IMG/VR virus record: IMGVR_UViG_3300031884_000002
Coordinates: 124,001 to 188,000 of that record
DNA: 64,000 bases
Strand: one strand, 5' to 3'
Below are positions 4,095 to 61,388 of the stretch, in pieces. The number at the start of each line of letters is the position of its first letter. The stretch's first letter is position 1. The notes beneath the pieces are model-generated. The model was not told the origin of the DNA. It worked only from the letters and a program-made list of their open reading frames with translations, and ran no database searches. A program made the position numbers and the translations under genes.

Positions 4095-4556
4095 ATGACA
4101 ACTGTGTATATCCTTGTAGGCTGCCCATCCAGTGGAAAATCAACTTGGGCATCAAAATGTGAGAATCATAATGCTGAATGTGTAATATCCACCGATGATA
4201 TTAGAGAAGAATTATCGGGAGATGCAACCGACCAATCAGTATCAGGAAAAGCATTTTCTATTGCTCGTAAACGATTACAAGAATACCTTAATGAAGGTCA
4301 TTCGGTGATAATCGATGCAACTAATATGTATCGTAAAACACGCAAAGATTTCCTTGATATAGCCAAGGATAATAATTCTAAAACGGTTGCGGTTGTGTTT
4401 GAAGTTACTAAAGAAACTGCAATTGAGAGAAATGCTAAACGTGCTGCTTCGGGTGGTAGGAATGTTCCTTCCCACGTTATAGAAAATATGATAGGTAAAT
4501 ACCAACGACCAGATACTATCGAGTTTAATGAAGTTTTATTTATATCAAAATTATGA
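4095..4556 (+). CDS. polynucleotide kinase-like P-loop kinase (AAA_33)
   Basis: GCPSSGKST, ISTDDIR, VIIDATN, ERNAKR, VPSHVI motifs. Confidence 0.85.
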   Translation: MTTVYILVGCPSSGKSTWASKCENHNAECVISTDDIREELSGDATDQSVSGKAFSIARKRLQEYLNEGHSVIIDATNMYRKTRKDFLDIAKDNNSKTVAVVFEVTKETAIERNAKRAASGGRNVPSHVIENMIGKYQRPDTIEFNEVLFISKL

Positions 4557-5482: not shown

Positions 5483-6163
5483 ATGATAACCAATGTTAAA
5501 CGATTAAAATATGTAATACTTAGCGATTTACATTTAGGCAGTGGAGTATGCCAACATATAAAACTTATATCTTTACTAAAAAATATAAACACTGAAACTC
5601 TGGTGTTAAATGGAGACATAATTGACATCGACCATCTTAAACGATTATCTAAAAAAGATTGGAAAATATTATCATTATTAAGAAAACTAAGTAAAAATAC
5701 ACATATTGTATATATTAGAGGAAACCACGATTCTAAAATTGCCGACATAATTTCAGATTTATTGGGATTTGAATTTAAAAATAATTATGATTTTATATGT
5801 AATGAAAAAAAGTTTCATATATTACATGGCGATGAGTTTGATTCATTTATAACTAATTTTCCACTTATAACCGAAATTGCAACTGGAATATATTATTATA
5901 TACAATTACTTAGTCCTAAAAAACAAGAATTAGCCAGAGTTTTAAAACGAAGAAGTAAAAACTTTATAAAATCTTGCGAGATGACAAAAAGAAAAGCAGA
6001 AGCACTTGCAAAAGAAAAAGGATATGACTACATTGTAGCGGGTCATTGCCATTCTGCTTTCTTTTCTCCTAATAGTCCATATATTAACTCAGGATGCTTT
6101 ACGGAATTGGATTGTTCTTATATAGAAATATCAGACGATAACATTCGATTGAAATACATTTAA
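5483..6163 (+). CDS. calcineurin-like metallophosphoesterase (LpxH-like)
   Basis: SDLHLG, LNGDIID, RGNHD, LHGD, GHCH motifs. Confidence 0.85.
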   Translation: MITNVKRLKYVILSDLHLGSGVCQHIKLISLLKNINTETLVLNGDIIDIDHLKRLSKKDWKILSLLRKLSKNTHIVYIRGNHDSKIADIISDLLGFEFKNNYDFICNEKKFHILHGDEFDSFITNFPLITEIATGIYYYIQLLSPKKQELARVLKRRSKNFIKSCEMTKRKAEALAKEKGYDYIVAGHCHSAFFSPNSPYINSGCFTELDCSYIEISDDNIRLKYI

Positions 6164-6328
6164 GATATTCATTGCTTTATCAAACTTTCTTTTTAATCCA
6201 AAGTCAAATCCGTTTGGATATAAATAATTTATTATCTTATACATTCCATTTATGTTAGTTATTCTTATATAAGAACTTTTAGAACATATTCCATTTCTTT
6301 TTTGTATAGTATATTTAATTTCTAGCGA
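6131..6328 (-). pseudogene. C-terminal remnant of a LAGLIDADG-type homing endonuclease
   Basis: Open frame with no start at its 5' end: SLEIKYTI...SYIRITNINGMYKIINYLYPNGFDFGLKRKFDK. Confidence 0.5.
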
Positions 6329-6369
6329 TTAGAAAATTGAAAGTGACATAAAAAGTGACAATAACATAT

Positions 6370-6999
6370 ATGAATATTCAAGAAATAAATGTTACATCCT
6401 ATCCAATAATTCTCGTGAGTGACATTCATTGTGATATTGACAAAATGAGGAAAATTAAATCTCTATATCCTCATAATAAAATATTATGTTTAGGAGATAT
6501 TACCGATTTATACTCTACAGGTAATAATTCAAACCAACGAACTATACAATATTTTATAGATAATGATATACCGGCGTGTTCTGGCAACCATGAAGAACAT
6601 ATTTCAGGTGTTGTAAATGGAAATACCGTCATGTTTTTGGATATTCATAACTCATTGGATATTGATGATTATAAGTTACCAAAACATCAATGTAAATATT
6701 TAAACGAATTACCAAGAGGCATTAAATTAAATGTATCAAATGGTAAATATTATTTATTATACCATCATTTACCTAAAGATGTATGGGGCAGAAAAGACAA
6801 AGGAACTCTATCACGAGAAGAATTTATATCTAATTTTAGCATAACTCACGACTGTATAGGAGTGTGTCATGGACATTTACACGTTCCATTCATAGAGGAA
6901 TATAATAATTTAACCACTAAAAGAATAAGTATAGGAGCATTAAAACATAATCATTATGCTATTATAGATGAAACCGGAGTTAAACTTAAACAATTATGA
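6370..6999 (+). CDS. metallophosphoesterase
   Basis: SDIH, LGDITD, GNHE, HGHLH motifs; ATG at 6370. Confidence 0.85.
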   Translation: MNIQEINVTSYPIILVSDIHCDIDKMRKIKSLYPHNKILCLGDITDLYSTGNNSNQRTIQYFIDNDIPACSGNHEEHISGVVNGNTVMFLDIHNSLDIDDYKLPKHQCKYLNELPRGIKLNVSNGKYYLLYHHLPKDVWGRKDKGTLSREEFISNFSITHDCIGVCHGHLHVPFIEEYNNLTTKRISIGALKHNHYAIIDETGVKLKQL

Positions 7000-7118
7000 G
7001 TGATAATAAACAAATCAAAACTTTTGGAAAGGGTTCTAAACGTCGTAAAGAAAATTTTAAAAAAGTCCAAGATAACTGGGACCAAATAAAAGGGTTTGGA
7101 AAACGTAGATTAAAATAA
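6996..7118 (+). CDS. small basic protein (40 aa, not in ORF track)
   Basis: MSDNKQIKTFGKGSKRRKENFKKVQDNWDQIKGFGKRRLK; ATGA overlap with the upstream stop. Confidence 0.6.
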   Translation: MSDNKQIKTFGKGSKRRKENFKKVQDNWDQIKGFGKRRLK

Positions 7119-7156
7119 CTTTACAATTTATGTTTATATGATATAATCTATTCATT

Positions 7157-7420
7157 ATGAATATTGCTGATATAAATCCAAATCAACCAACGTCTATTAA
7201 ACAACAATCTCCAATCGATTTAAAATTAACGGGTGAAGTTAAGTGTAATAAGTGCAACGGAATAGCATTTACACAAGCCGTTATCTTTAGAAGTGTATCT
7301 GCGTTAATATCGCCAAGTGGCAAGGCTGGATTTTATCCCATCGAAACTTGGGCATGTATGTGTGGGCATATTAACGATTCATTCCTTCCTGTAGAATTAC
7401 GTGCTCCAAAACTCACTTGA
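7157..7420 (+). CDS. zinc-ribbon protein
   Basis: CNKC...CMCGH motifs; own promoter TTTACA-N16-TATAAT at 7120-7147. Confidence 0.65.
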   Translation: MNIADINPNQPTSIKQQSPIDLKLTGEVKCNKCNGIAFTQAVIFRSVSALISPSGKAGFYPIETWACMCGHINDSFLPVELRAPKLT

Positions 7421-7444
7421 CAAAAATCTAAACTCTGATATATT
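7417..7444 (+). promoter_or_regulatory. promoter of the suppressor tRNA
   Basis: TTGACA-N16-TATATT, overlapping an ATATTTAT motif. Confidence 0.65.
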
Positions 7445-7455
7445 TATTGGAGTGA

Positions 7456-7530
7456 GGCTAATTAGTTTAACGGTAAAACAAGATATTCTAAACATCTTAG
7501 TCATCGGTTCAAATCCGATATTAGCCACCA
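7456..7530 (+). tRNA. amber suppressor tRNA (anticodon CUA)
   Basis: Cloverleaf: GGCTAAT/ATTAGCC acceptor stem, D arm GTTT-AACGGTA-AAAC, anticodon loop TT-CTA-AA (CTA at 7488-7490), T arm ATCGG-TTCAAAT-CCGAT, discriminator A, encoded CCA. Confidence 0.92.
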
Positions 7531-7532
7531 AT

Positions 7533-7712
7533 ATGACCTTTGAAAGATTTAGCGAAATATGGGATATGCTGATAAAAATGCCAGATGCTAAAGAAATTGT
7601 ATTTTCAACTGGAATGTCTCAACATACAATGAATGCTTTAATTAAATACGCAAATGGAGATAAATCCGAAGTTGAAAAAATCAGAGAAGCATTACGTAGA
7701 AATAAGAGTTGA
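7533..7712 (+). CDS. hypothetical protein (59 aa)
   Basis: ATG 2 nt after the tRNA CCA; this is the real part of track ORF 7401..7712. Confidence 0.6.
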   Translation: MTFERFSEIWDMLIKMPDAKEIVFSTGMSQHTMNALIKYANGDKSEVEKIREALRRNKS

Positions 7713-7736
7713 CATTTTAGATTTTTCGAATATACT
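7709..7736 (+). promoter_or_regulatory. promoter of pth2, probably giving a leaderless mRNA
   Basis: TTGACA-N16-TATACT, with ATG 7744 only 7 nt after the -10 box. Confidence 0.7.
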
Positions 7737-7743
7737 TATAATT

Positions 7744-8142
7744 ATGAATACATAGATTGATAGTCCAACATAGGTAGATACAACACTTCGGTTATATGCT
7801 CTTGTCAGAACTGACTTGGGAATGTCCGAAGGAAAAACAGTTTCACAAGCCGGACATTCTTATATTGGTGCATTTCTTCAAGCATCTAAAGATATTCAAC
7901 AGGAATATCATAAAGAGTTTCCTCAAAGTCCCGGCACTAAAATATGTCTAAAAGTTAAATCCTTAGACAAATTACTTCAAGCCGAAGAACAAGCCAAAAT
8001 ATCAAACATTCCATACTTTCGTGTGGTTGATTCCGGCTGTTCTAATTTCTTTAATGGTGAACCTACAATTACTGCACTTGGTATAGGACCGGCAACCAAG
8101 GAACAAATACAACACATTACCAAAAAATTTCAACTCCTATAA
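7744..8142 (+). CDS. pth2: peptidyl-tRNA hydrolase, PTH2 family, with two in-frame TAG codons (7753, 7771)
   Basis: LYALVRTDLGMSEGKTVSQAGH, KICLKV, VVDSG, TALGIGP and ITKKFQLL match PTH2. The conserved first strand lies upstream of the TTG at 7816, and the only upstream ATG is 7744. Confidence 0.85.
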
Positions 8143-8151
8143 AGAGTGAAA

Positions 8152-8175
8152 ATGTATGGTAATAACACCATACAT
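8152..8175. other. perfect 9-bp hairpin between pth2 and the next gene
   Basis: ATGTATGGT-AATAAC-ACCATACAT; no U-tract. Confidence 0.6.
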
Positions 8176-8191
8176 CAATTAAAAATAAAAA

Positions 8192-8452
8192 ATGAATACG
8201 ATAAATAAATATCTAACATTCTCAACGAAACAACAATATCTGAATTATAGAACCGAATGGAAGTTCAGTTATAAATCATTAAGTATTGAAATTAGAAATT
8301 TCAAGCGAGAAATTCATGCTTCATGTCATCATATAACATGGTCAGAATATTCTCAATTACTTAAACTTAAACTTAAAGCAACCGAAATGTTACAAGAATT
8401 AAAAGAGGCTAAAATACTGGCACAAGAACAATATCAAGCATCCCATAAATAA
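8192..8452 (+). CDS. helical hypothetical protein
   Basis: 86-aa ORF downstream of pth2. Confidence 0.65.
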   Translation: MNTINKYLTFSTKQQYLNYRTEWKFSYKSLSIEIRNFKREIHASCHHITWSEYSQLLKLKLKATEMLQELKEAKILAQEQYQASHK

Positions 8453-8453
8453 T

Positions 8454-8699
8454 ATGAATATTACTAAAAATAGAGTTAATACTATAATTAACCGATATGA
8501 AACATTATTACAGGAAGTTGAGTATTTTATTAATCAACAGAACCAAGATTGGAGAAGCGGAAAGATTCGTATTGACAATGGAAATATTGAAGAGTATATT
8601 AATACCGCTTGTAATTGTCATCCGGAATATGAATGGGTTCATCGGTCAACCATAGATTCATTCATTGAATGGAATGAATCTAAAAAAACTTCAACTTGA
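8454..8699 (+). CDS. hypothetical protein
   Basis: 81-aa ORF with a CNCHPEY motif. Confidence 0.6.
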   Translation: MNITKNRVNTIINRYETLLQEVEYFINQQNQDWRSGKIRIDNGNIEEYINTACNCHPEYEWVHRSTIDSFIEWNESKKTST

Positions 8700-8735
8700 C
8701 TTTTTAGATTTTATCGCTATAATTATAATTGAACT

Positions 8736-9362
8736 ATGAAAAATATAGAGAATAGAACAATTGTGTTAAAGTTAAACAAAAACTTTATTGTAACCGACGT
8801 TGCATTGGTATCCAAAACCATATGCGACTTGGTTTCTGGTACTGTGCTTGCACTTGACATAAATTATAAATTAAATGATAACGGAACTCCCAGCGACACA
8901 TTGGACTATTTTAATCCGGTTGAATGGGATGAATGGAAAAAATTACCAATTAGAGATTGGGATTTGGTAATTCATTCTAAAAACATGACGGTCAGAGTTC
9001 CTACTGTAGTTGTTACCAAACATTACAGTAAGGTTAGATTTAAAAAGTTTAGTGGAAAGCCTACCAAAGAAGGACTTGGTATGCGTGATGGATTTACCGA
9101 TATATATACTGGTGAAGAGTTAGAACCAGATTCTGCAACCATCGAGCATATAATGCCTTTAAGCCGTGGTGGAACTGATACTTATGATAATACTGGATTG
9201 ACATTAAAATCTACCAATAATTGGAAAGGAAGTAGAACTGTAGAAGAAGCCGGATTGACATTGGTAATCAACCCATATCATCCTCGTCCAATTCCTATAT
9301 CCAGTACAATTAGAAAAGTTAGGAATAGAGATTGGTCTCATTTTTTAATGAATCATAAATAA
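8736..9362 (+). CDS. HNH endonuclease (McrA-like)
   Basis: RDGFT..., TIEHIMPLSRGG...N...NNWKGSRT; promoter TTGACT-N16-TATAAT at 8696-8723. Confidence 0.8.
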   Translation: MKNIENRTIVLKLNKNFIVTDVALVSKTICDLVSGTVLALDINYKLNDNGTPSDTLDYFNPVEWDEWKKLPIRDWDLVIHSKNMTVRVPTVVVTKHYSKVRFKKFSGKPTKEGLGMRDGFTDIYTGEELEPDSATIEHIMPLSRGGTDTYDNTGLTLKSTNNWKGSRTVEEAGLTLVINPYHPRPIPISSTIRKVRNRDWSHFLMNHK

Positions 9363-9368
9363 TTCAAC

Positions 9369-9392
9369 TCCCGCTTTAAAGCGGGATTTTTT
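9369..9392 (+). terminator. intrinsic terminator between convergent genes
   Basis: Palindrome TCCCGCTTTAAAGCGGGA followed by T6. Confidence 0.75.
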
Positions 9393-9547
9393 ATTAATTT
9401 CTTACATATTCCCAAGATACATCATCCGACGTATTTACTCGACATATCCAATGACCTACCGGAGTTTCATGAGAAATATTATTATTGGCGAGTTCAACCC
9501 ATTTTTTATGTTCGTCGCTATTCCAATATTTATCTATTAATTCTTGT

Positions 9548-10012
9548 TCAGTCAGTAGTTTCGCTGGCTTCATCTTCATCGTCTCCATCATCATTGTTTT
9601 CTTTATGGAAGTTCTCAAAATCTTCATCGGTAAGATTTAAAAGATTTACTAATGTGTTTATAATATAACACATTGTCATCTTATTAAAGTTCATACCCAT
9701 AATTCTATGTGCTATAAATATAACTAATTTATTTATAGCTGGTAGTTTATCAGACATAGAAGAAATATTCAATCCATCTTTTCTTAAAGTGCCGGGAATA
9801 GTTCCATTTTCCAACGCAGTTAATATATCATTCTCAATTTTTTGAATAAACATTTTATGTATCTCTTCCGTAGTCTTCCCTTTTTTAGCATGTTTTATAA
9901 AATACTTCTGTATATCTTTTTCGGATAATCGTCTCGCCACACTGAAACTAGAAAGTATTCCCAATTTATTTAGTATATGTGTTGGTTGAGTCATGATACT
10001 AATAAATATCAA
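9548..10012 (-). CDS. hypothetical protein with acidic tail
   Basis: 154-aa ORF. Confidence 0.6.
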   Translation of the reverse strand: MIFISIMTQPTHILNKLGILSSFSVARRLSEKDIQKYFIKHAKKGKTTEEIHKMFIQKIENDILTALENGTIPGTLRKDGLNISSMSDKLPAINKLVIFIAHRIMGMNFNKMTMCYIINTLVNLLNLTDEDFENFHKENNDDGDDEDEASETTD

Positions 10013-15694: not shown

Positions 15695-16654
15695 CTATAT
15701 ATAAATATTAGGGATATATTCTTTAATTGGGATTTTATTTAACTTATTTAAAGTAAACATATTCCATTCGGTTTCCCATACATATTTTATATTATATCCG
15801 TTTTTATATAAATAACTCATACGGTTGACTGTTCTATTATATAATTCCCTATATGTTATTTTTACAACCGGATGTATATTATTATTGGGATATTTAGATG
15901 GATTACCATGCCAATAATCTCCCAAAAATTCATAAATTGTATTAGTCGTTGGATCATATCCATCTACTTTTTTTCGTAAAATGTTTACCTGTCTATGATT
16001 AACATCATTTGGTATTTTACAATATTCCAAAAATAATAATTCCGGTTTAGATATCCTTCGAATACAATACGGACATCCATGTCCGTCAAAATGGTCGTTT
16101 GGACGTTGATCGAATATATGGTTACACATATTACATATAATTTTAACAGGAATATAGGTATCAATATAATTAACTAATTTATAATCATATAACATTTTAT
16201 GAATTGATATTGCCTTTATCTTAAATGTGTCGGTATTATGATCTATGCATCCATTACATGAGGGACATCCCACCGATTTAATTAAAAATGTATCCAATTT
16301 TCTACTAAATATAAAATTACAAATACTACATTTTGCTGTTATACTATCTTCTCGTTTAATATTATTACCATCCACACAATATATAAAACTATGTTTATGA
16401 ATATTATACAACCGTTTAAGGGTAACATCAATCGAAATCACAGACAATATTGACCTTTTATCTATACCGCATTTCTTACATCCTTGCCCATGTAAATGAC
16501 TATCTGGACGAATGATAAACTCTCCATGTTTAGGACATATAATTATAACCGGTATTTTATTGTTTACATATGATACTTTTTCATATATAAAATAGTTATT
16601 ATGTTTTACATTAGATTTATTTATAAAATCTATCAATGTATTTTTCCGAGACAT
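15695..16654 (-). CDS. free-standing endonuclease (Zn-ribbon repeats plus PD-(D/E)XK-like C-terminal domain)
   Basis: CPKHG...HLHGQGC repeats; VDGYDPTTNTIYEFLGDYWHGNP; paralog of 62025..62951. Confidence 0.78.
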   Translation of the reverse strand: MSRKNTLIDFINKSNVKHNNYFIYEKVSYVNNKIPVIIICPKHGEFIIRPDSHLHGQGCKKCGIDKRSILSVISIDVTLKRLYNIHKHSFIYCVDGNNIKREDSITAKCSICNFIFSRKLDTFLIKSVGCPSCNGCIDHNTDTFKIKAISIHKMLYDYKLVNYIDTYIPVKIICNMCNHIFDQRPNDHFDGHGCPYCIRRISKPELLFLEYCKIPNDVNHRQVNILRKKVDGYDPTTNTIYEFLGDYWHGNPSKYPNNNIHPVVKITYRELYNRTVNRMSYLYKNGYNIKYVWETEWNMFTLNKLNKIPIKEYIPNIYI

Positions 16655-60768: not shown

Positions 60769-61098
60769 ATGTTAACAATATGTTGTATAATTTCTATATT
60801 GCTCCTGTGTCAATTCAGAACTGAGTTTTGGATAGAATATTGTAAATTATGCAACCTAAATAATATTTCCTTTTATGAAGATTATGAATTAAAAAAATCA
60901 AATGATGTTACATTGGAATATTTAGATTATTTAAGACAATATCATAACTGTTTTTTCATACGCCTTATAACCTGTCCTATATGTTTAACAATTTGGCTCG
61001 GTATAATGGCTGGAATATTTACCTTATCATTAATTGAAATCCCTATATTTATCATTGGTTCTTTGATTATATTTGGTATAGTTAATAAACTAATATAA
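60769..61098 (+). CDS. membrane protein with CPIC motif
   Basis: Hydrophobic segments; LITCPICLTIW. Confidence 0.55.
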   Translation: MLTICCIISILLLCQFRTEFWIEYCKLCNLNNISFYEDYELKKSNDVTLEYLDYLRQYHNCFFIRLITCPICLTIWLGIMAGIFTLSLIEIPIFIIGSLIIFGIVNKLI

Positions 61099-61388
61099 TG
61101 ATTATAAAAAATGCAACAGAATGTAACAATTTCATAAAAGAAAATGGATTATCTTCATTTGATTCTATGTTCGGACAATTAGACCAATGTTTAACTAAAT
61201 ATCTAACTAAATGTAATTGTCATAAAAAAGAAGATAAAATTAAACTATATCAATCTTGCAATTCTATTTATTACAATTTAACTTCGCAAGCTATACCAAG
61301 ACTACGAGGGCAGATTTTACAACAAACCGGACATAGAATTATATATTTCTATGATAACAATAAACTTATTGGGTCAATAGGTCATTAG
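61098..61388 (+). CDS. hypothetical protein
   Basis: 96-aa ORF; ends TAG-GTT-TAA. Confidence 0.55.
   Translation: MIIKNATECNNFIKENGLSSFDSMFGQLDQCLTKYLTKCNCHKKEDKIKLYQSCNSIYYNLTSQAIPRLRGQILQQTGHRIIYFYDNNKLIGSIGH

What the first reader, a model, noticed from the sequence alone, without database searches (positions are those of the whole stretch)
7456..8142. Amber-suppressor tRNA next to a peptidyl-tRNA hydrolase that needs double amber read-through
Seen: a tRNA with anticodon CTA at 7456-7530. About 210 bp downstream, a promoter (7709-7736) places ATG 7744 at the probable transcript start, and the frame reads ATG AAT ACA TAG ATT GAT AGT CCA ACA TAG GTA GAT ACA ACA CTT CGG TTA TAT GCT CTT GTC AGA ACT GAC TTG, i.e. 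MNT*IDSPT*VDTTLRLYALVRTDL. Both stops are TAG in the same ACA-TAG context, and there is no ATG/GTG/TTG between the second TAG and the conserved strand. The rest of the gene is intact. Established: the xxxVRxDL strand is part of the PTH2 fold core; Pth recycles dropped-off peptidyl-tRNA; very short minigenes (lambda bar) provoke drop-off; prfB uses an early internal stop as a release-factor sensor. Inference: full-length Pth2 is made only when the suppressor tRNA outcompetes RF1 twice, a roughly squared, switch-like sensor of termination status. Otherwise only the MNT tripeptide is made. This would be targeted stop-codon gating of a translation quality-control gene in a region that is otherwise standard code. 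I do not know of a description of this arrangement.
Basis: partly seen in the sequence, partly recalled or inferred. Interest (0 to 1): 0.92.

Follow-up and report, generated by a model that had tools for sequence, protein, structure and literature searches.

The report
Suppressor tRNA gates phage Pth2 gene
A 354-kb phage carries its own amber-suppressor tRNA next to a peptidyl-tRNA hydrolase gene that can be translated only by reading through two early TAG stops; the same pairing, with the stop always matching the phage tRNA's anticodon, recurs in over a hundred related phage loci, so it looks like a conserved translational switch that I could not find described.

Summary
There is a tRNA(CUA) at 7456-7530. 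A strong sigma70-type promoter ends 7 nt before ATG 7744. The frame reads MNT-TAG-IDSPT-TAG and then a complete PTH2 domain, and no start codon lies between the second TAG and the first beta strand.

It is neither an error nor decay. A second sample gives the identical sequence. Among 146 distinct relatives, 111 have an in-frame stop before the domain with no usable start after it. The codons between the stop and the internal Met show clear coding periodicity.

The stop matches the phage's own suppressor wherever one was found:
- TAG with CUA in 42 non-redundant loci.
- TAA with UUA in L007.
- TGA with UCA in cultured Agrobacterium phage Atu_ph07 and in L182/L183. Their close relatives Phosso and L185 use TAG with CUA.

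The window (90 ORFs) is otherwise standard code. Related phages still use the cognate stop as a terminator, so this is gene-specific gating, not general recoding.

In some relatives the tRNA gene sits in frame inside the leader. I found no published description.

What the coupling is for is inferred: it probably ties peptidyl-tRNA recycling to suppressor activity.

The parts
7417..7444 (+). sigma70-type promoter-like site upstream of the tRNA (TTGACA, 16 nt, TATATT, TG before the -10)
   Evidence: 11 of 12 match. The tRNA starts 12 nt after the -10 hexamer.
7456..7530 (+). amber-suppressor tRNA, anticodon CUA, CCA end encoded, short variable loop
   Evidence: ARAGORN. Rfam tRNA 63.6 bits. The amino-acid identity is not resolved.
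7533..7712 (+). 59-aa ORF between the tRNA and the PTH2 promoter. It starts 3 nt after the tRNA CCA end. It is not part of the conserved module.
   Evidence: no Pfam or PHROG match. It is absent from the closest relative L012, where the tRNA ends 142 nt before the internal Met.
7709..7736 (+). sigma70-type promoter-like site placing the transcript start at or next to ATG 7744 (leaderless or nearly leaderless mRNA)
   Evidence: 11 of 12. The same layout (TTGAC, 16-17 nt, TAnnnT, 7-10 nt, ATG) is found upstream of PTH2 in 46 fetched loci; at most of them the ATG opens the leader.
7744..7755 (+). leader mini-ORF ATG AAT ACA followed by the first in-frame TAG (7753-7755)
7756..7773 (+). five linker codons (IDSPT) and the second in-frame TAG (7771-7773), in the conserved context ACR TAG GTN
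   Evidence: Context statistics, motif.
7774..8142 (+). PTH2 (archaeal/eukaryotic-type peptidyl-tRNA hydrolase) domain, 122 codons plus TAA. The first strand is at 7789-7809 and the internal Met at 7822.
   Evidence: Pfam E=5e-25. Sequence match to PDB Pth2 chains from their residue 2. AF2 pLDDT 93 with a strand at residues 6-12. TM 0.81-0.89 to solved Pth2 structures.

Best explanation
This is a conserved two-part phage module. It consists of a suppressor tRNA and a PTH2 peptidyl-tRNA hydrolase whose translation requires that tRNA.

Shown: a promoter-like site puts the likely transcript start at ATG 7744. The frame meets TAG at codons 4 and 10. The complete PTH2 fold follows, with no start codon of its own.

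Inferred: without charged tRNA(CUA), release factor 1 ends translation after three residues. With it, both TAGs are decoded and a 131-residue active enzyme is made. PTH2 output therefore follows suppressor activity relative to RF1.

Inferred purpose: suppressor read-through sends ribosomes past normal stops and raises stalled or non-stop complexes and peptidyl-tRNA drop-off. The coupling would supply the tRNA-recycling enzyme exactly when, and as much as, suppression is occurring. It may also delay the enzyme until the tRNA has matured.
For: - Anatomy of the window.
- The region upstream of the internal Met is translated. Across 65 representatives under 90% identical, summed entropy over the 12 codons before the Met is 9.6, 3.4 and 19.6 for codon positions 1, 2 and 3. 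This stretch aligns with residues 2-12 of solved Pth2 and is a confident strand in the model.
- 58 of 65 representatives have an in-frame stop before the strand and no ATG/GTG/TTG after it. Of 146 distinct sequences, 104 are gated by TAG, 4 by TGA and 3 by TAA.
- All gated sequences fall in one clade of 129 (support 90). The outgroups start normally.
- 34 of 44 representatives with enough flank have a same-strand suppressor tRNA 53-680 nt upstream. The pairs are 42 TAG/cta, 1 TAA/tta and no mismatch.
- Independent switches of stop type: L007 TAA with tta; Atu_ph07 TGA with its only suppressor tRNA-Sup-TCA, while its relative Phosso has TAG and tRNA(cta); L182/L183 TGA with tca, while their relative L185 has TAG with cta.
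- Spacing between two leader stops is a multiple of 3 in 28 of 29 cases, covering 12 of 13 distinct lengths.
- A purine follows the stop in 117 of 124 loci.
- The gating is gene-specific. The window has no other TAG-interrupted ORF. Related phages still use the cognate stop as a terminator: Phosso TAG 28 of 168, Atu_ph07 TGA 20 of 57.
- tmRNA genes lie within a few kb of PTH2 in seven loci from several branches of the tree.
- Suppressor read-through is known to create non-stop complexes handled by tmRNA, and Pth recycles dropped-off peptidyl-tRNA (PMC3985003).
Against: - There is no expression, proteomic or aminoacylation evidence. The inserted residue is unknown.
- The promoters are consensus matches only, and such matches are not enriched in the region as a whole.
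- The window tRNA has a mismatched last pair in its anticodon stem.
- The codon after the stop is usually Val (GTT). It is GTG in 6 of 124 loci, so re-initiation cannot be fully excluded in those.
- Lineage L190/L191 has a plain ATG start and no stop, yet keeps the tRNA. The tRNA therefore has some other role, and gating is dispensable there.
- Only about 82 of 354 kb of this genome was seen, all of it early or replication-type genes. Late genes could also carry TAG.
- The biological purpose of the coupling is inferred from general knowledge, not tested.
Confidence: 0.8

Rival explanations
1. This is ordinary genome-wide recoding. The phage reads TAG as an amino acid in late genes (code 15), and PTH2 is simply one more late gene that happens to contain TAG.
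For: TAG is rare as a terminator in this genome: 2 of 90 ORFs in the window and 5 of 118 with the flanks. Both TAG terminators in the window have a backup stop within two codons. The part of the genome seen holds only early-type genes. Phage stop-codon recoding with suppressor tRNAs is known.
Against: The stops are confined to the first codons, before the domain, at a conserved place and in a conserved nucleotide context in over 100 divergent loci. No other ORF in 64 kb carries one. Flanks of relatives show no TAG-merging signal above the TGA/TAA controls. Atu_ph07, Phosso and L182/L183 use the cognate stop as a frequent terminator.
Confidence: 0.08
2. The leader is a separate regulatory mini-ORF. 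PTH2 starts by termination-reinitiation, or by non-canonical initiation at the codon after the stop, without any need for the suppressor.
For: A Val codon follows the stop in 69 of 124 loci, and it is GTG in 6. Gene callers start several database proteins at that GTG.
Against: In most loci the codon is GTT or GTA, and ATT, GAA and others also occur; none of the common ones is a normal start. This model does not explain why the stop triplet changes together with the tRNA anticodon. Nor does it explain why spacing between two stops keeps the frame.
Confidence: 0.06
3. The real product is the 106-residue protein from the internal ATG 7822, as most gene callers annotate it. The upstream part is untranslated.
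For: Most database homologs are called at 106-107 aa from this Met. The Met is invariant.
Against: The 12 codons before the Met vary almost only at third positions. They form the first strand of the fold in solved structures and in the model. The same Met is internal in archaeal Pth2. No Shine-Dalgarno-like sequence precedes it.
Confidence: 0.03
4. The gene is a pseudogene, or the TAGs are assembly errors.
For: Two stops lie within ten codons of the start.
Against: The sequence is identical in a second sample. The stops are kept in relatives of 40-93% identity while the domain is under purifying selection.
Confidence: 0.01

Closest known systems
Phage stop-codon recoding with suppressor tRNAs and 'code change modules' (Borges et al., bioRxiv 10.1101/2021.08.26.457843)
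   Same: A phage-encoded suppressor tRNA lets in-frame stops be read, and this is proposed to act as post-transcriptional control. That paper also notes standard-code phages that carry suppressors.
   Different: There, the stops are spread through many structural and lysis genes and the codon is effectively reassigned. Here, one or two stops sit at a fixed site in the leader of a single gene, in genomes that still terminate at that codon. That paper does not mention a peptidyl-tRNA hydrolase.
prfB (release factor 2) autoregulation through an early in-frame UGA
   Same: An early in-frame stop makes the yield of a translation factor depend on how efficiently that stop is recognised (my own knowledge).
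   Different: prfB is recoded by a +1 frameshift and senses its own product. Here the recoding is in-frame read-through by a dedicated tRNA, and the product is not a release factor.
Lambda bar minigenes and Pth
   Same: Two- to four-codon ORFs ending in a stop are the classic source of peptidyl-tRNA drop-off that Pth must clear (references listed). Many leaders here are Met plus 1-3 codons plus a stop.
   Different: bar minigenes are free-standing and toxic. Here the mini-ORF is fused in frame to the hydrolase gene. Whether drop-off occurs on it is untested.
Programmed read-through in viruses (Q-beta A1 protein, retroviral gag-pol)
   Same: An in-frame stop is decoded at some frequency to make a longer functional protein (my own knowledge).
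   Different: Those cases use host near-cognate tRNAs, extend a complete protein at its C-terminal end, and yield a minor product. Here the virus supplies a cognate tRNA and the stop precedes the whole functional domain.
PTH2 genes of jumbo phages (Iyer et al. 2021, PMC7824862); orphan suppressor tRNAs of XacN1 and Atu_ph07 (PMC5852040, PMC6102473)
   Same: The enzyme family and phage groups are the same. Those papers list PTH2 and suppressor tRNAs separately.
   Different: None of them links the two. The XacN1 authors found no target for its suppressors, and its PTH2 is in fact not gated. The Atu_ph07 homolog is annotated as a hypothetical protein starting at the internal Met.

Membership tests
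PTH2 peptidyl-tRNA hydrolase (Pfam PF01981) | Sequence match to the family profile over its full length | tested here: met
   E=5.3e-25, 88 bits against a cut-off of 23, profile 2-115 of 115
PTH2 peptidyl-tRNA hydrolase (Pfam PF01981) | The alpha/beta fold of solved Pth2 structures, including the N-terminal strand | tested here: met
   AF2 pLDDT 93.1 with a strand at residues 6-12. TM 0.81-0.89 to 2zv3, 3erj and 1xty.
PTH2 peptidyl-tRNA hydrolase (Pfam PF01981) | Conserved Lys of the GK motif and the conserved Asp. From memory, these are K18 and D86, the active-site residues of the Sulfolobus enzyme. | tested here: met
   K21 and D86 of the piece are invariant in the family alignment. They align with the corresponding residues of 1xty. 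Their catalytic role is recalled, not tested.
PTH2 peptidyl-tRNA hydrolase (Pfam PF01981) | Hydrolysis of peptidyl-tRNA | not testable with these tools
   Needs an enzyme assay or complementation of a pth(ts) strain.
Nonsense-suppressor tRNA | Canonical cloverleaf with an anticodon complementary to a stop codon | tested here: met
   ARAGORN anticodon CTA. Rfam 63.6 bits, full model. The loop reads U33, CUA, A37, A38.
Nonsense-suppressor tRNA | Expressed, processed and aminoacylated | not testable with these tools
   There is a promoter-like site and an encoded CCA only. The identity search was inconclusive.
Programmed stop-codon read-through | An in-frame stop at a conserved site, with the downstream frame under coding selection and lacking its own start | tested here: met
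Programmed stop-codon read-through | A decoding agent that matches the stop | tested here: met
   Stop type and anticodon agree in all 43 linked representatives and in the three switched lineages plus the Phosso/Atu_ph07 pair.
Programmed stop-codon read-through | The read-through protein is detected | not testable with these tools
   Needs mass spectrometry or a reporter.
Genome-wide stop-codon reassignment (code 15) | In-frame TAG in many genes, and TAG not used as a terminator | tested here: not met
   None of the other 89 ORFs in the window needs TAG. TAG ends 5 of 118 ORFs in this genome and 28 of 168 in Phosso. The late genes of this genome were not seen.
Leaderless mRNA | Transcript start at the start codon and no Shine-Dalgarno sequence | tested here: inconclusive
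   The -10 hexamer ends 7 nt before the ATG and no SD is present. The same spacing is seen in relatives. The transcript start itself is not measurable here. Phosso has a GGAG before its leader ATG.

The most novel reading that the evidence does not exclude
In a subset of relatives the suppressor tRNA gene lies inside the PTH2 reading frame. The order is: promoter, leaderless ATG, a few codons, TAG, the tRNA (often exactly 12 nt after the TAG), then PTH2, all in one open frame. If this is functional, the transcript is a feedback device. While suppressor is scarce, ribosomes stop at the TAG and the tRNA folds and is cut out. Once suppressor is plentiful, ribosomes read through, run over the tRNA sequence so that it cannot mature, and make PTH2 instead. 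That would be a tRNA that limits its own production through translation of its own precursor. The window holds the unlinked, two-promoter version of the same module. Basis: in 12 of 12 loci with no ATG between the tRNA and PTH2, the upstream ATG is in frame and the frame is open through the tRNA. Where PTH2 has its own ATG this holds in only 1 of 5 (Fisher p=0.002). The embedded tRNAs are good tRNAs by Rfam, 57-64 bits.
Probability: 0.3. Interest if true: 0.92.

Novelty: new variant of a known kind. Interest (0 to 1): 0.88.

Why it matters
- It gives the orphan suppressor tRNA of at least one standard-code jumbo phage a concrete, conserved target. The Atu_ph07 authors named no specific one (the XacN1 authors found none, and its PTH2 is not gated).
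- It shows natural, gene-specific use of a stop codon as a regulatory codon read by a virus-supplied tRNA. This is distinct from wholesale code change and may be an early step towards it.
- It corrects the annotation of over a hundred PTH2 genes that are called 16 or more residues short.
- It links suppression, peptidyl-tRNA recycling and, in some phages, a neighbouring tmRNA into one quality-control cluster.
- Two related cultured phages carry swapped pairs (Atu_ph07 TGA/UCA, Phosso TAG/CUA), so the idea can be tested directly.
- The compact promoter, leader and tRNA cassette is also a ready-made orthogonal expression switch.

Tried and rejected
- Nucleotide search of 6000-10000 against 50,697 phage records found no match. 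Cultured phages have only distant PTH2 homologs, under 43% identity.
- I first suspected that the motif ACR-TAG-GTT was a phage promoter or processing site, because a copy often precedes the tRNA. I rejected this. The motif is not enriched in the window (3 found, 2.2 expected). It almost never occurs elsewhere in the flanks. Its copies keep the reading frame. Its stop triplet changes with the anticodon.
- An initiator-type tRNA starting at TAG was rejected: the G1-C72 pair is intact and the anticodon stem does not have the three G-C pairs.
- No RNA structure that might promote read-through was found in the leader (z=-1.06).
- tRNA identity: comparison with 111 other phage tRNAs and two BLAST searches gave only a weak Lys-like signal for some relatives and nothing for the window tRNA.
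- A crude scan for general TAG recoding in flanks gave fewer merges for TAG than for the TGA and TAA controls.
- Walking out from the window to reach late genes gave 17 kb more of early-type genes.
- The apparently intact database proteins P0001, P0003 and P0011 turned out to be gene calls starting at a GTG right after the TAG.

Full report
**What is in the window.** ARAGORN finds a single tRNA in the 64 kb, at 7456-7530 on the + strand, with anticodon CTA. Rfam's tRNA model matches it end to end at 63.6 bits. Its CCA end is encoded. An 11-of-12 sigma70-type promoter match lies at 7417-7444.

A second 11-of-12 match (TTGACA, 16 nt, TATACT) lies at 7709-7736 and ends 7 nt before ATG 7744. From that ATG the frame reads three codons, TAG (7753-7755), five codons, TAG (7771-7773), then 122 codons to TAA 8140-8142. 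Both TAGs follow ACA and precede a purine.

The first canonical start after the second TAG is TTG 7816, then ATG 7822. A 59-codon ORF with no known relatives fills 7533-7712.

**The protein.** The piece after the second TAG matches Pfam PTH2 at E=5e-25. Profile positions 2-115 of 115 begin at its sixth residue. It aligns with solved archaeal Pth2 chains from their residue 2. An AlphaFold model built on 32 relatives has pLDDT 93.1, with a strand at residues 6-12, upstream of the internal Met at residue 17. The model superposes on 2zv3, 3erj and 1xty at TM 0.81-0.89. A protein starting at ATG 7822 would therefore lack the first strand of the fold.

**Not an error, not general recoding.** The window belongs to a 353,772-bp viral contig. 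A contig from a different sample is identical over the 12.8 kb compared, including both TAGs. Sixteen contigs over 200 kb carry a neighbouring gene.

Of 90 ORFs in the window, none but this one needs TAG read-through. Their terminators are TAA 53, TGA 35 and TAG 2, and both TAG terminators have a backup stop within two codons. The window holds replication, repair-type and sugar-modification genes and no structural genes. Whether the late genes of this genome carry TAG remains open.

**Relatives.** Searches of IMG/VR, JGI metagenomes, GTDB genomes and GenBank phages gave about 190 loci.
- In 65 representatives under 90% identical, the 12 codons before the internal Met have summed entropies of 9.6, 3.4 and 19.6 at codon positions 1, 2 and 3. 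This is the signature of translated sequence.
- In 58 of the 65, an in-frame stop precedes the strand with no ATG, GTG or TTG in between.
- Over all 146 distinct sequences, 104 are gated by TAG, 4 by TGA and 3 by TAA (one of the TAA cases is doubtful). Thirteen have a GTG or TTG by chance after the stop. Eighteen start at ATG, and 13 of those 18 lie outside the gated clade.
- On a tree, all gated genes fall in one clade of 129 sequences (support 90).
- Database proteins that looked intact are gene calls starting at a GTG right after the TAG.
- The window's closest relatives also have two TAGs.

**The link to the tRNA.** Of 44 representatives with at least 700 nt upstream, 34 have a suppressor tRNA on the same strand, 53-680 nt before the internal Met. 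Stop and anticodon agree in every case: 42 TAG with cta, 1 TAA with tta.

The rare types are the informative ones.
- L007 has two TAA stops in the usual context and a tta tRNA.
- Cultured Agrobacterium phage Atu_ph07 has Met plus five codons, then TGA, before its PTH2 homolog. That gene is annotated as a hypothetical protein starting at the internal Met. The only suppressor of this phage is tRNA-Sup-TCA.
- Its relative Sinorhizobium phage Phosso has TAG at the corresponding place and an annotated tRNA(cta).
- L182 and L183 have TGA and a 76-77 nt tca tRNA, whereas their 75%-identical relative L185 has TAG and a cta tRNA at the equivalent position.

I see no explanation for these repeated joint changes other than decoding of the leader stop by the phage's own tRNA.

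**Gene-specific, not a code change.** Related phages still end many genes with the cognate stop. The figures are TAG 28 of 168 in the Phosso regions read, TGA 20 of 57 in Atu_ph07 (267 genome-wide according to its authors), and about 27% TGA in L182/L183. Flanks of relatives show no excess of TAG-split ORFs. The stop sits at a fixed place, 1-45 codons before the first strand and mostly 4-8.

**Context and leader.** The codon before the stop is Thr in 75 of 124 loci (ACG or ACA). The codon after it is Val in 69 (GTT in 52). The next base is a purine in 117. A purine in that position is the classical favourable context for nonsense suppression in E. coli (my own knowledge).

Many leaders are Met plus one to three codons. 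In 46 loci a TTGAC, 16-17 nt, TAnnnT promoter ends 7-10 nt before an ATG, which in most of them opens the leader. This suggests leaderless or nearly leaderless transcripts. No stable RNA structure follows the stops in the window. Where two stops occur, their spacing is a multiple of 3 in 28 of 29 cases over 12 of 13 distinct lengths, so the stretch between them is read as codons.

**An unexpected variant.** In several lineages the promoter and ATG lie upstream of the tRNA. A mini-ORF ending in the same ACR-TAG-GTT motif comes first, then the tRNA (exactly 12-13 nt later in 7 of 21 cases), then PTH2. In 12 of 12 loci with no ATG between the tRNA and PTH2, the upstream ATG is in frame with PTH2 and the frame is open through the tRNA. 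Where PTH2 has its own ATG the figure is 1 of 5. These tRNAs score 57-64 bits in Rfam. This suggests that ribosomes can translate across the tRNA precursor, which would give feedback on tRNA maturation. I report it as the most novel reading, not as established. The loci are related, so the counts overstate independence.

**Mechanism and purpose.**
- Shown: the anatomy, its conservation, the coding constraint and the covariation.
- Inferred with good confidence: PTH2 is made only when the suppressor decodes the leader stop or stops in competition with the release factor.
- Inferred with less confidence: why. Read-through caused by suppressor tRNAs produces non-stop complexes that tmRNA must rescue, and Pth recycles peptidyl-tRNA that drops off (review PMC3985003). 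Phage tmRNA genes lie within a few kb of PTH2 in seven loci from several lineages. Metallophosphatase and kinase genes of RNA-repair type are recurrent neighbours. Making the hydrolase in proportion to suppression fits this picture.
- One lineage lost the stop and kept the tRNA, so the tRNA is not there only for PTH2.

**What is known.** Borges et al. describe phage suppressor tRNAs, code-change modules and regulation of late genes by recoded stops, but not a hydrolase. Iyer et al. note PTH2 in jumbo phages without any stop. The XacN1 authors could not find a target for its suppressors. The Atu_ph07 authors listed the opal suppressor and two hydrolases separately. Three full-text searches found no description of the pairing. 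Absence from that library is not proof of absence from the literature.

**Verdict.** The finding extends well beyond the window. It is a new variant of suppressor-tRNA-based control in phages: gene-specific, aimed at a translation quality-control enzyme, and directly testable in two cultured phages.

Noticed in passing
L070 2609-3012; L071 1752-2159; L122 2401-2750; L171 5286-5634; L182 7694-8203; L183 6732-7235; L184 4767-5158: Phage-encoded tmRNA genes lie within a few kb of the gated PTH2 gene in several lineages. Those in L182-L184 are the two-piece alphaproteobacterial type (Rfam 102 bits in L182).
   Followed up: partly
L003 4374-4453; L004 3657-3735; L190 2203-2282 and 2285-2366; L191 1626-1705 and 1708-1789: tRNA-like genes with eight-base anticodon loops (ARAGORN 'anticodons' gcaa and taaa) lie just downstream of PTH2 in several relatives. 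They may decode four-base codons or may simply be odd tRNAs.
   Followed up: no
window 15695-16654 (-) and 61098-61388 (+): These are the only two of 90 ORFs that end in TAG. Each has a second in-frame stop two codons later (TAG TTA TGA; TAG GTT TAA). TGA ends 35 ORFs despite 29% G+C.
   Followed up: partly
window 7533-7712 (+): A 59-codon ORF starts 3 nt after the tRNA's CCA end. It has no Pfam or PHROG match and is absent from the closest relative L012.
   Followed up: partly
window 4095-4553, 5483-6160, 6355-6996 (+): An AAA_33 kinase (polynucleotide-kinase-like) and two adjacent calcineurin-type metallophosphatases lie just upstream of the module. A metallophosphatase is also near PTH2 in Atu_ph07, Phosso, L177 and L190, and Atu_ph07 has an RnlA-type RNA ligase close by.
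   Followed up: partly
window 7483-7498 (anticodon stem of the tRNA): The last pair of the anticodon stem is an A-C mismatch (marked in the Rfam alignment). The stem therefore has four pairs, or the loop nine bases.
   Followed up: no
L173, L174, L175 (Verrucomicrobiota MAG contigs; L175 from a 1.83-Mb contig): The tRNA(cta)-PTH2 module with its leader TAG occurs on contigs binned as Verrucomicrobia. One is very long, which points either to an integrated element or to the host group.
   Followed up: no
window about 20000-60700; L181 1-8700: A large cluster of glycosyltransferases, a DegT-type aminotransferase, epimerases and methyltransferases. It looks like a sugar-modification pathway carried by the phage.
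   Followed up: no
L003 about 2560-2980; window 8736-9359: HNH endonuclease genes lie next to the module. In L003 one is inserted between the tRNA and PTH2, in the same frame as the upstream mini-ORF.
   Followed up: no
L180 1987-3099; L181 16266-18528: The same genome, outside the window, carries an IS605 OrfB/TnpB-type gene and intein-containing ribonucleotide reductase genes.
   Followed up: no
L188 12308-12829, 19675-19941, 31193-31765, 32686-34608 (Phosso): Phosso is annotated with IF-3, ribosomal protein S21, ribosome recycling factor and threonyl-tRNA synthetase genes. Recycling factor promotes peptidyl-tRNA drop-off, which may bear on the role of PTH2.
   Followed up: no
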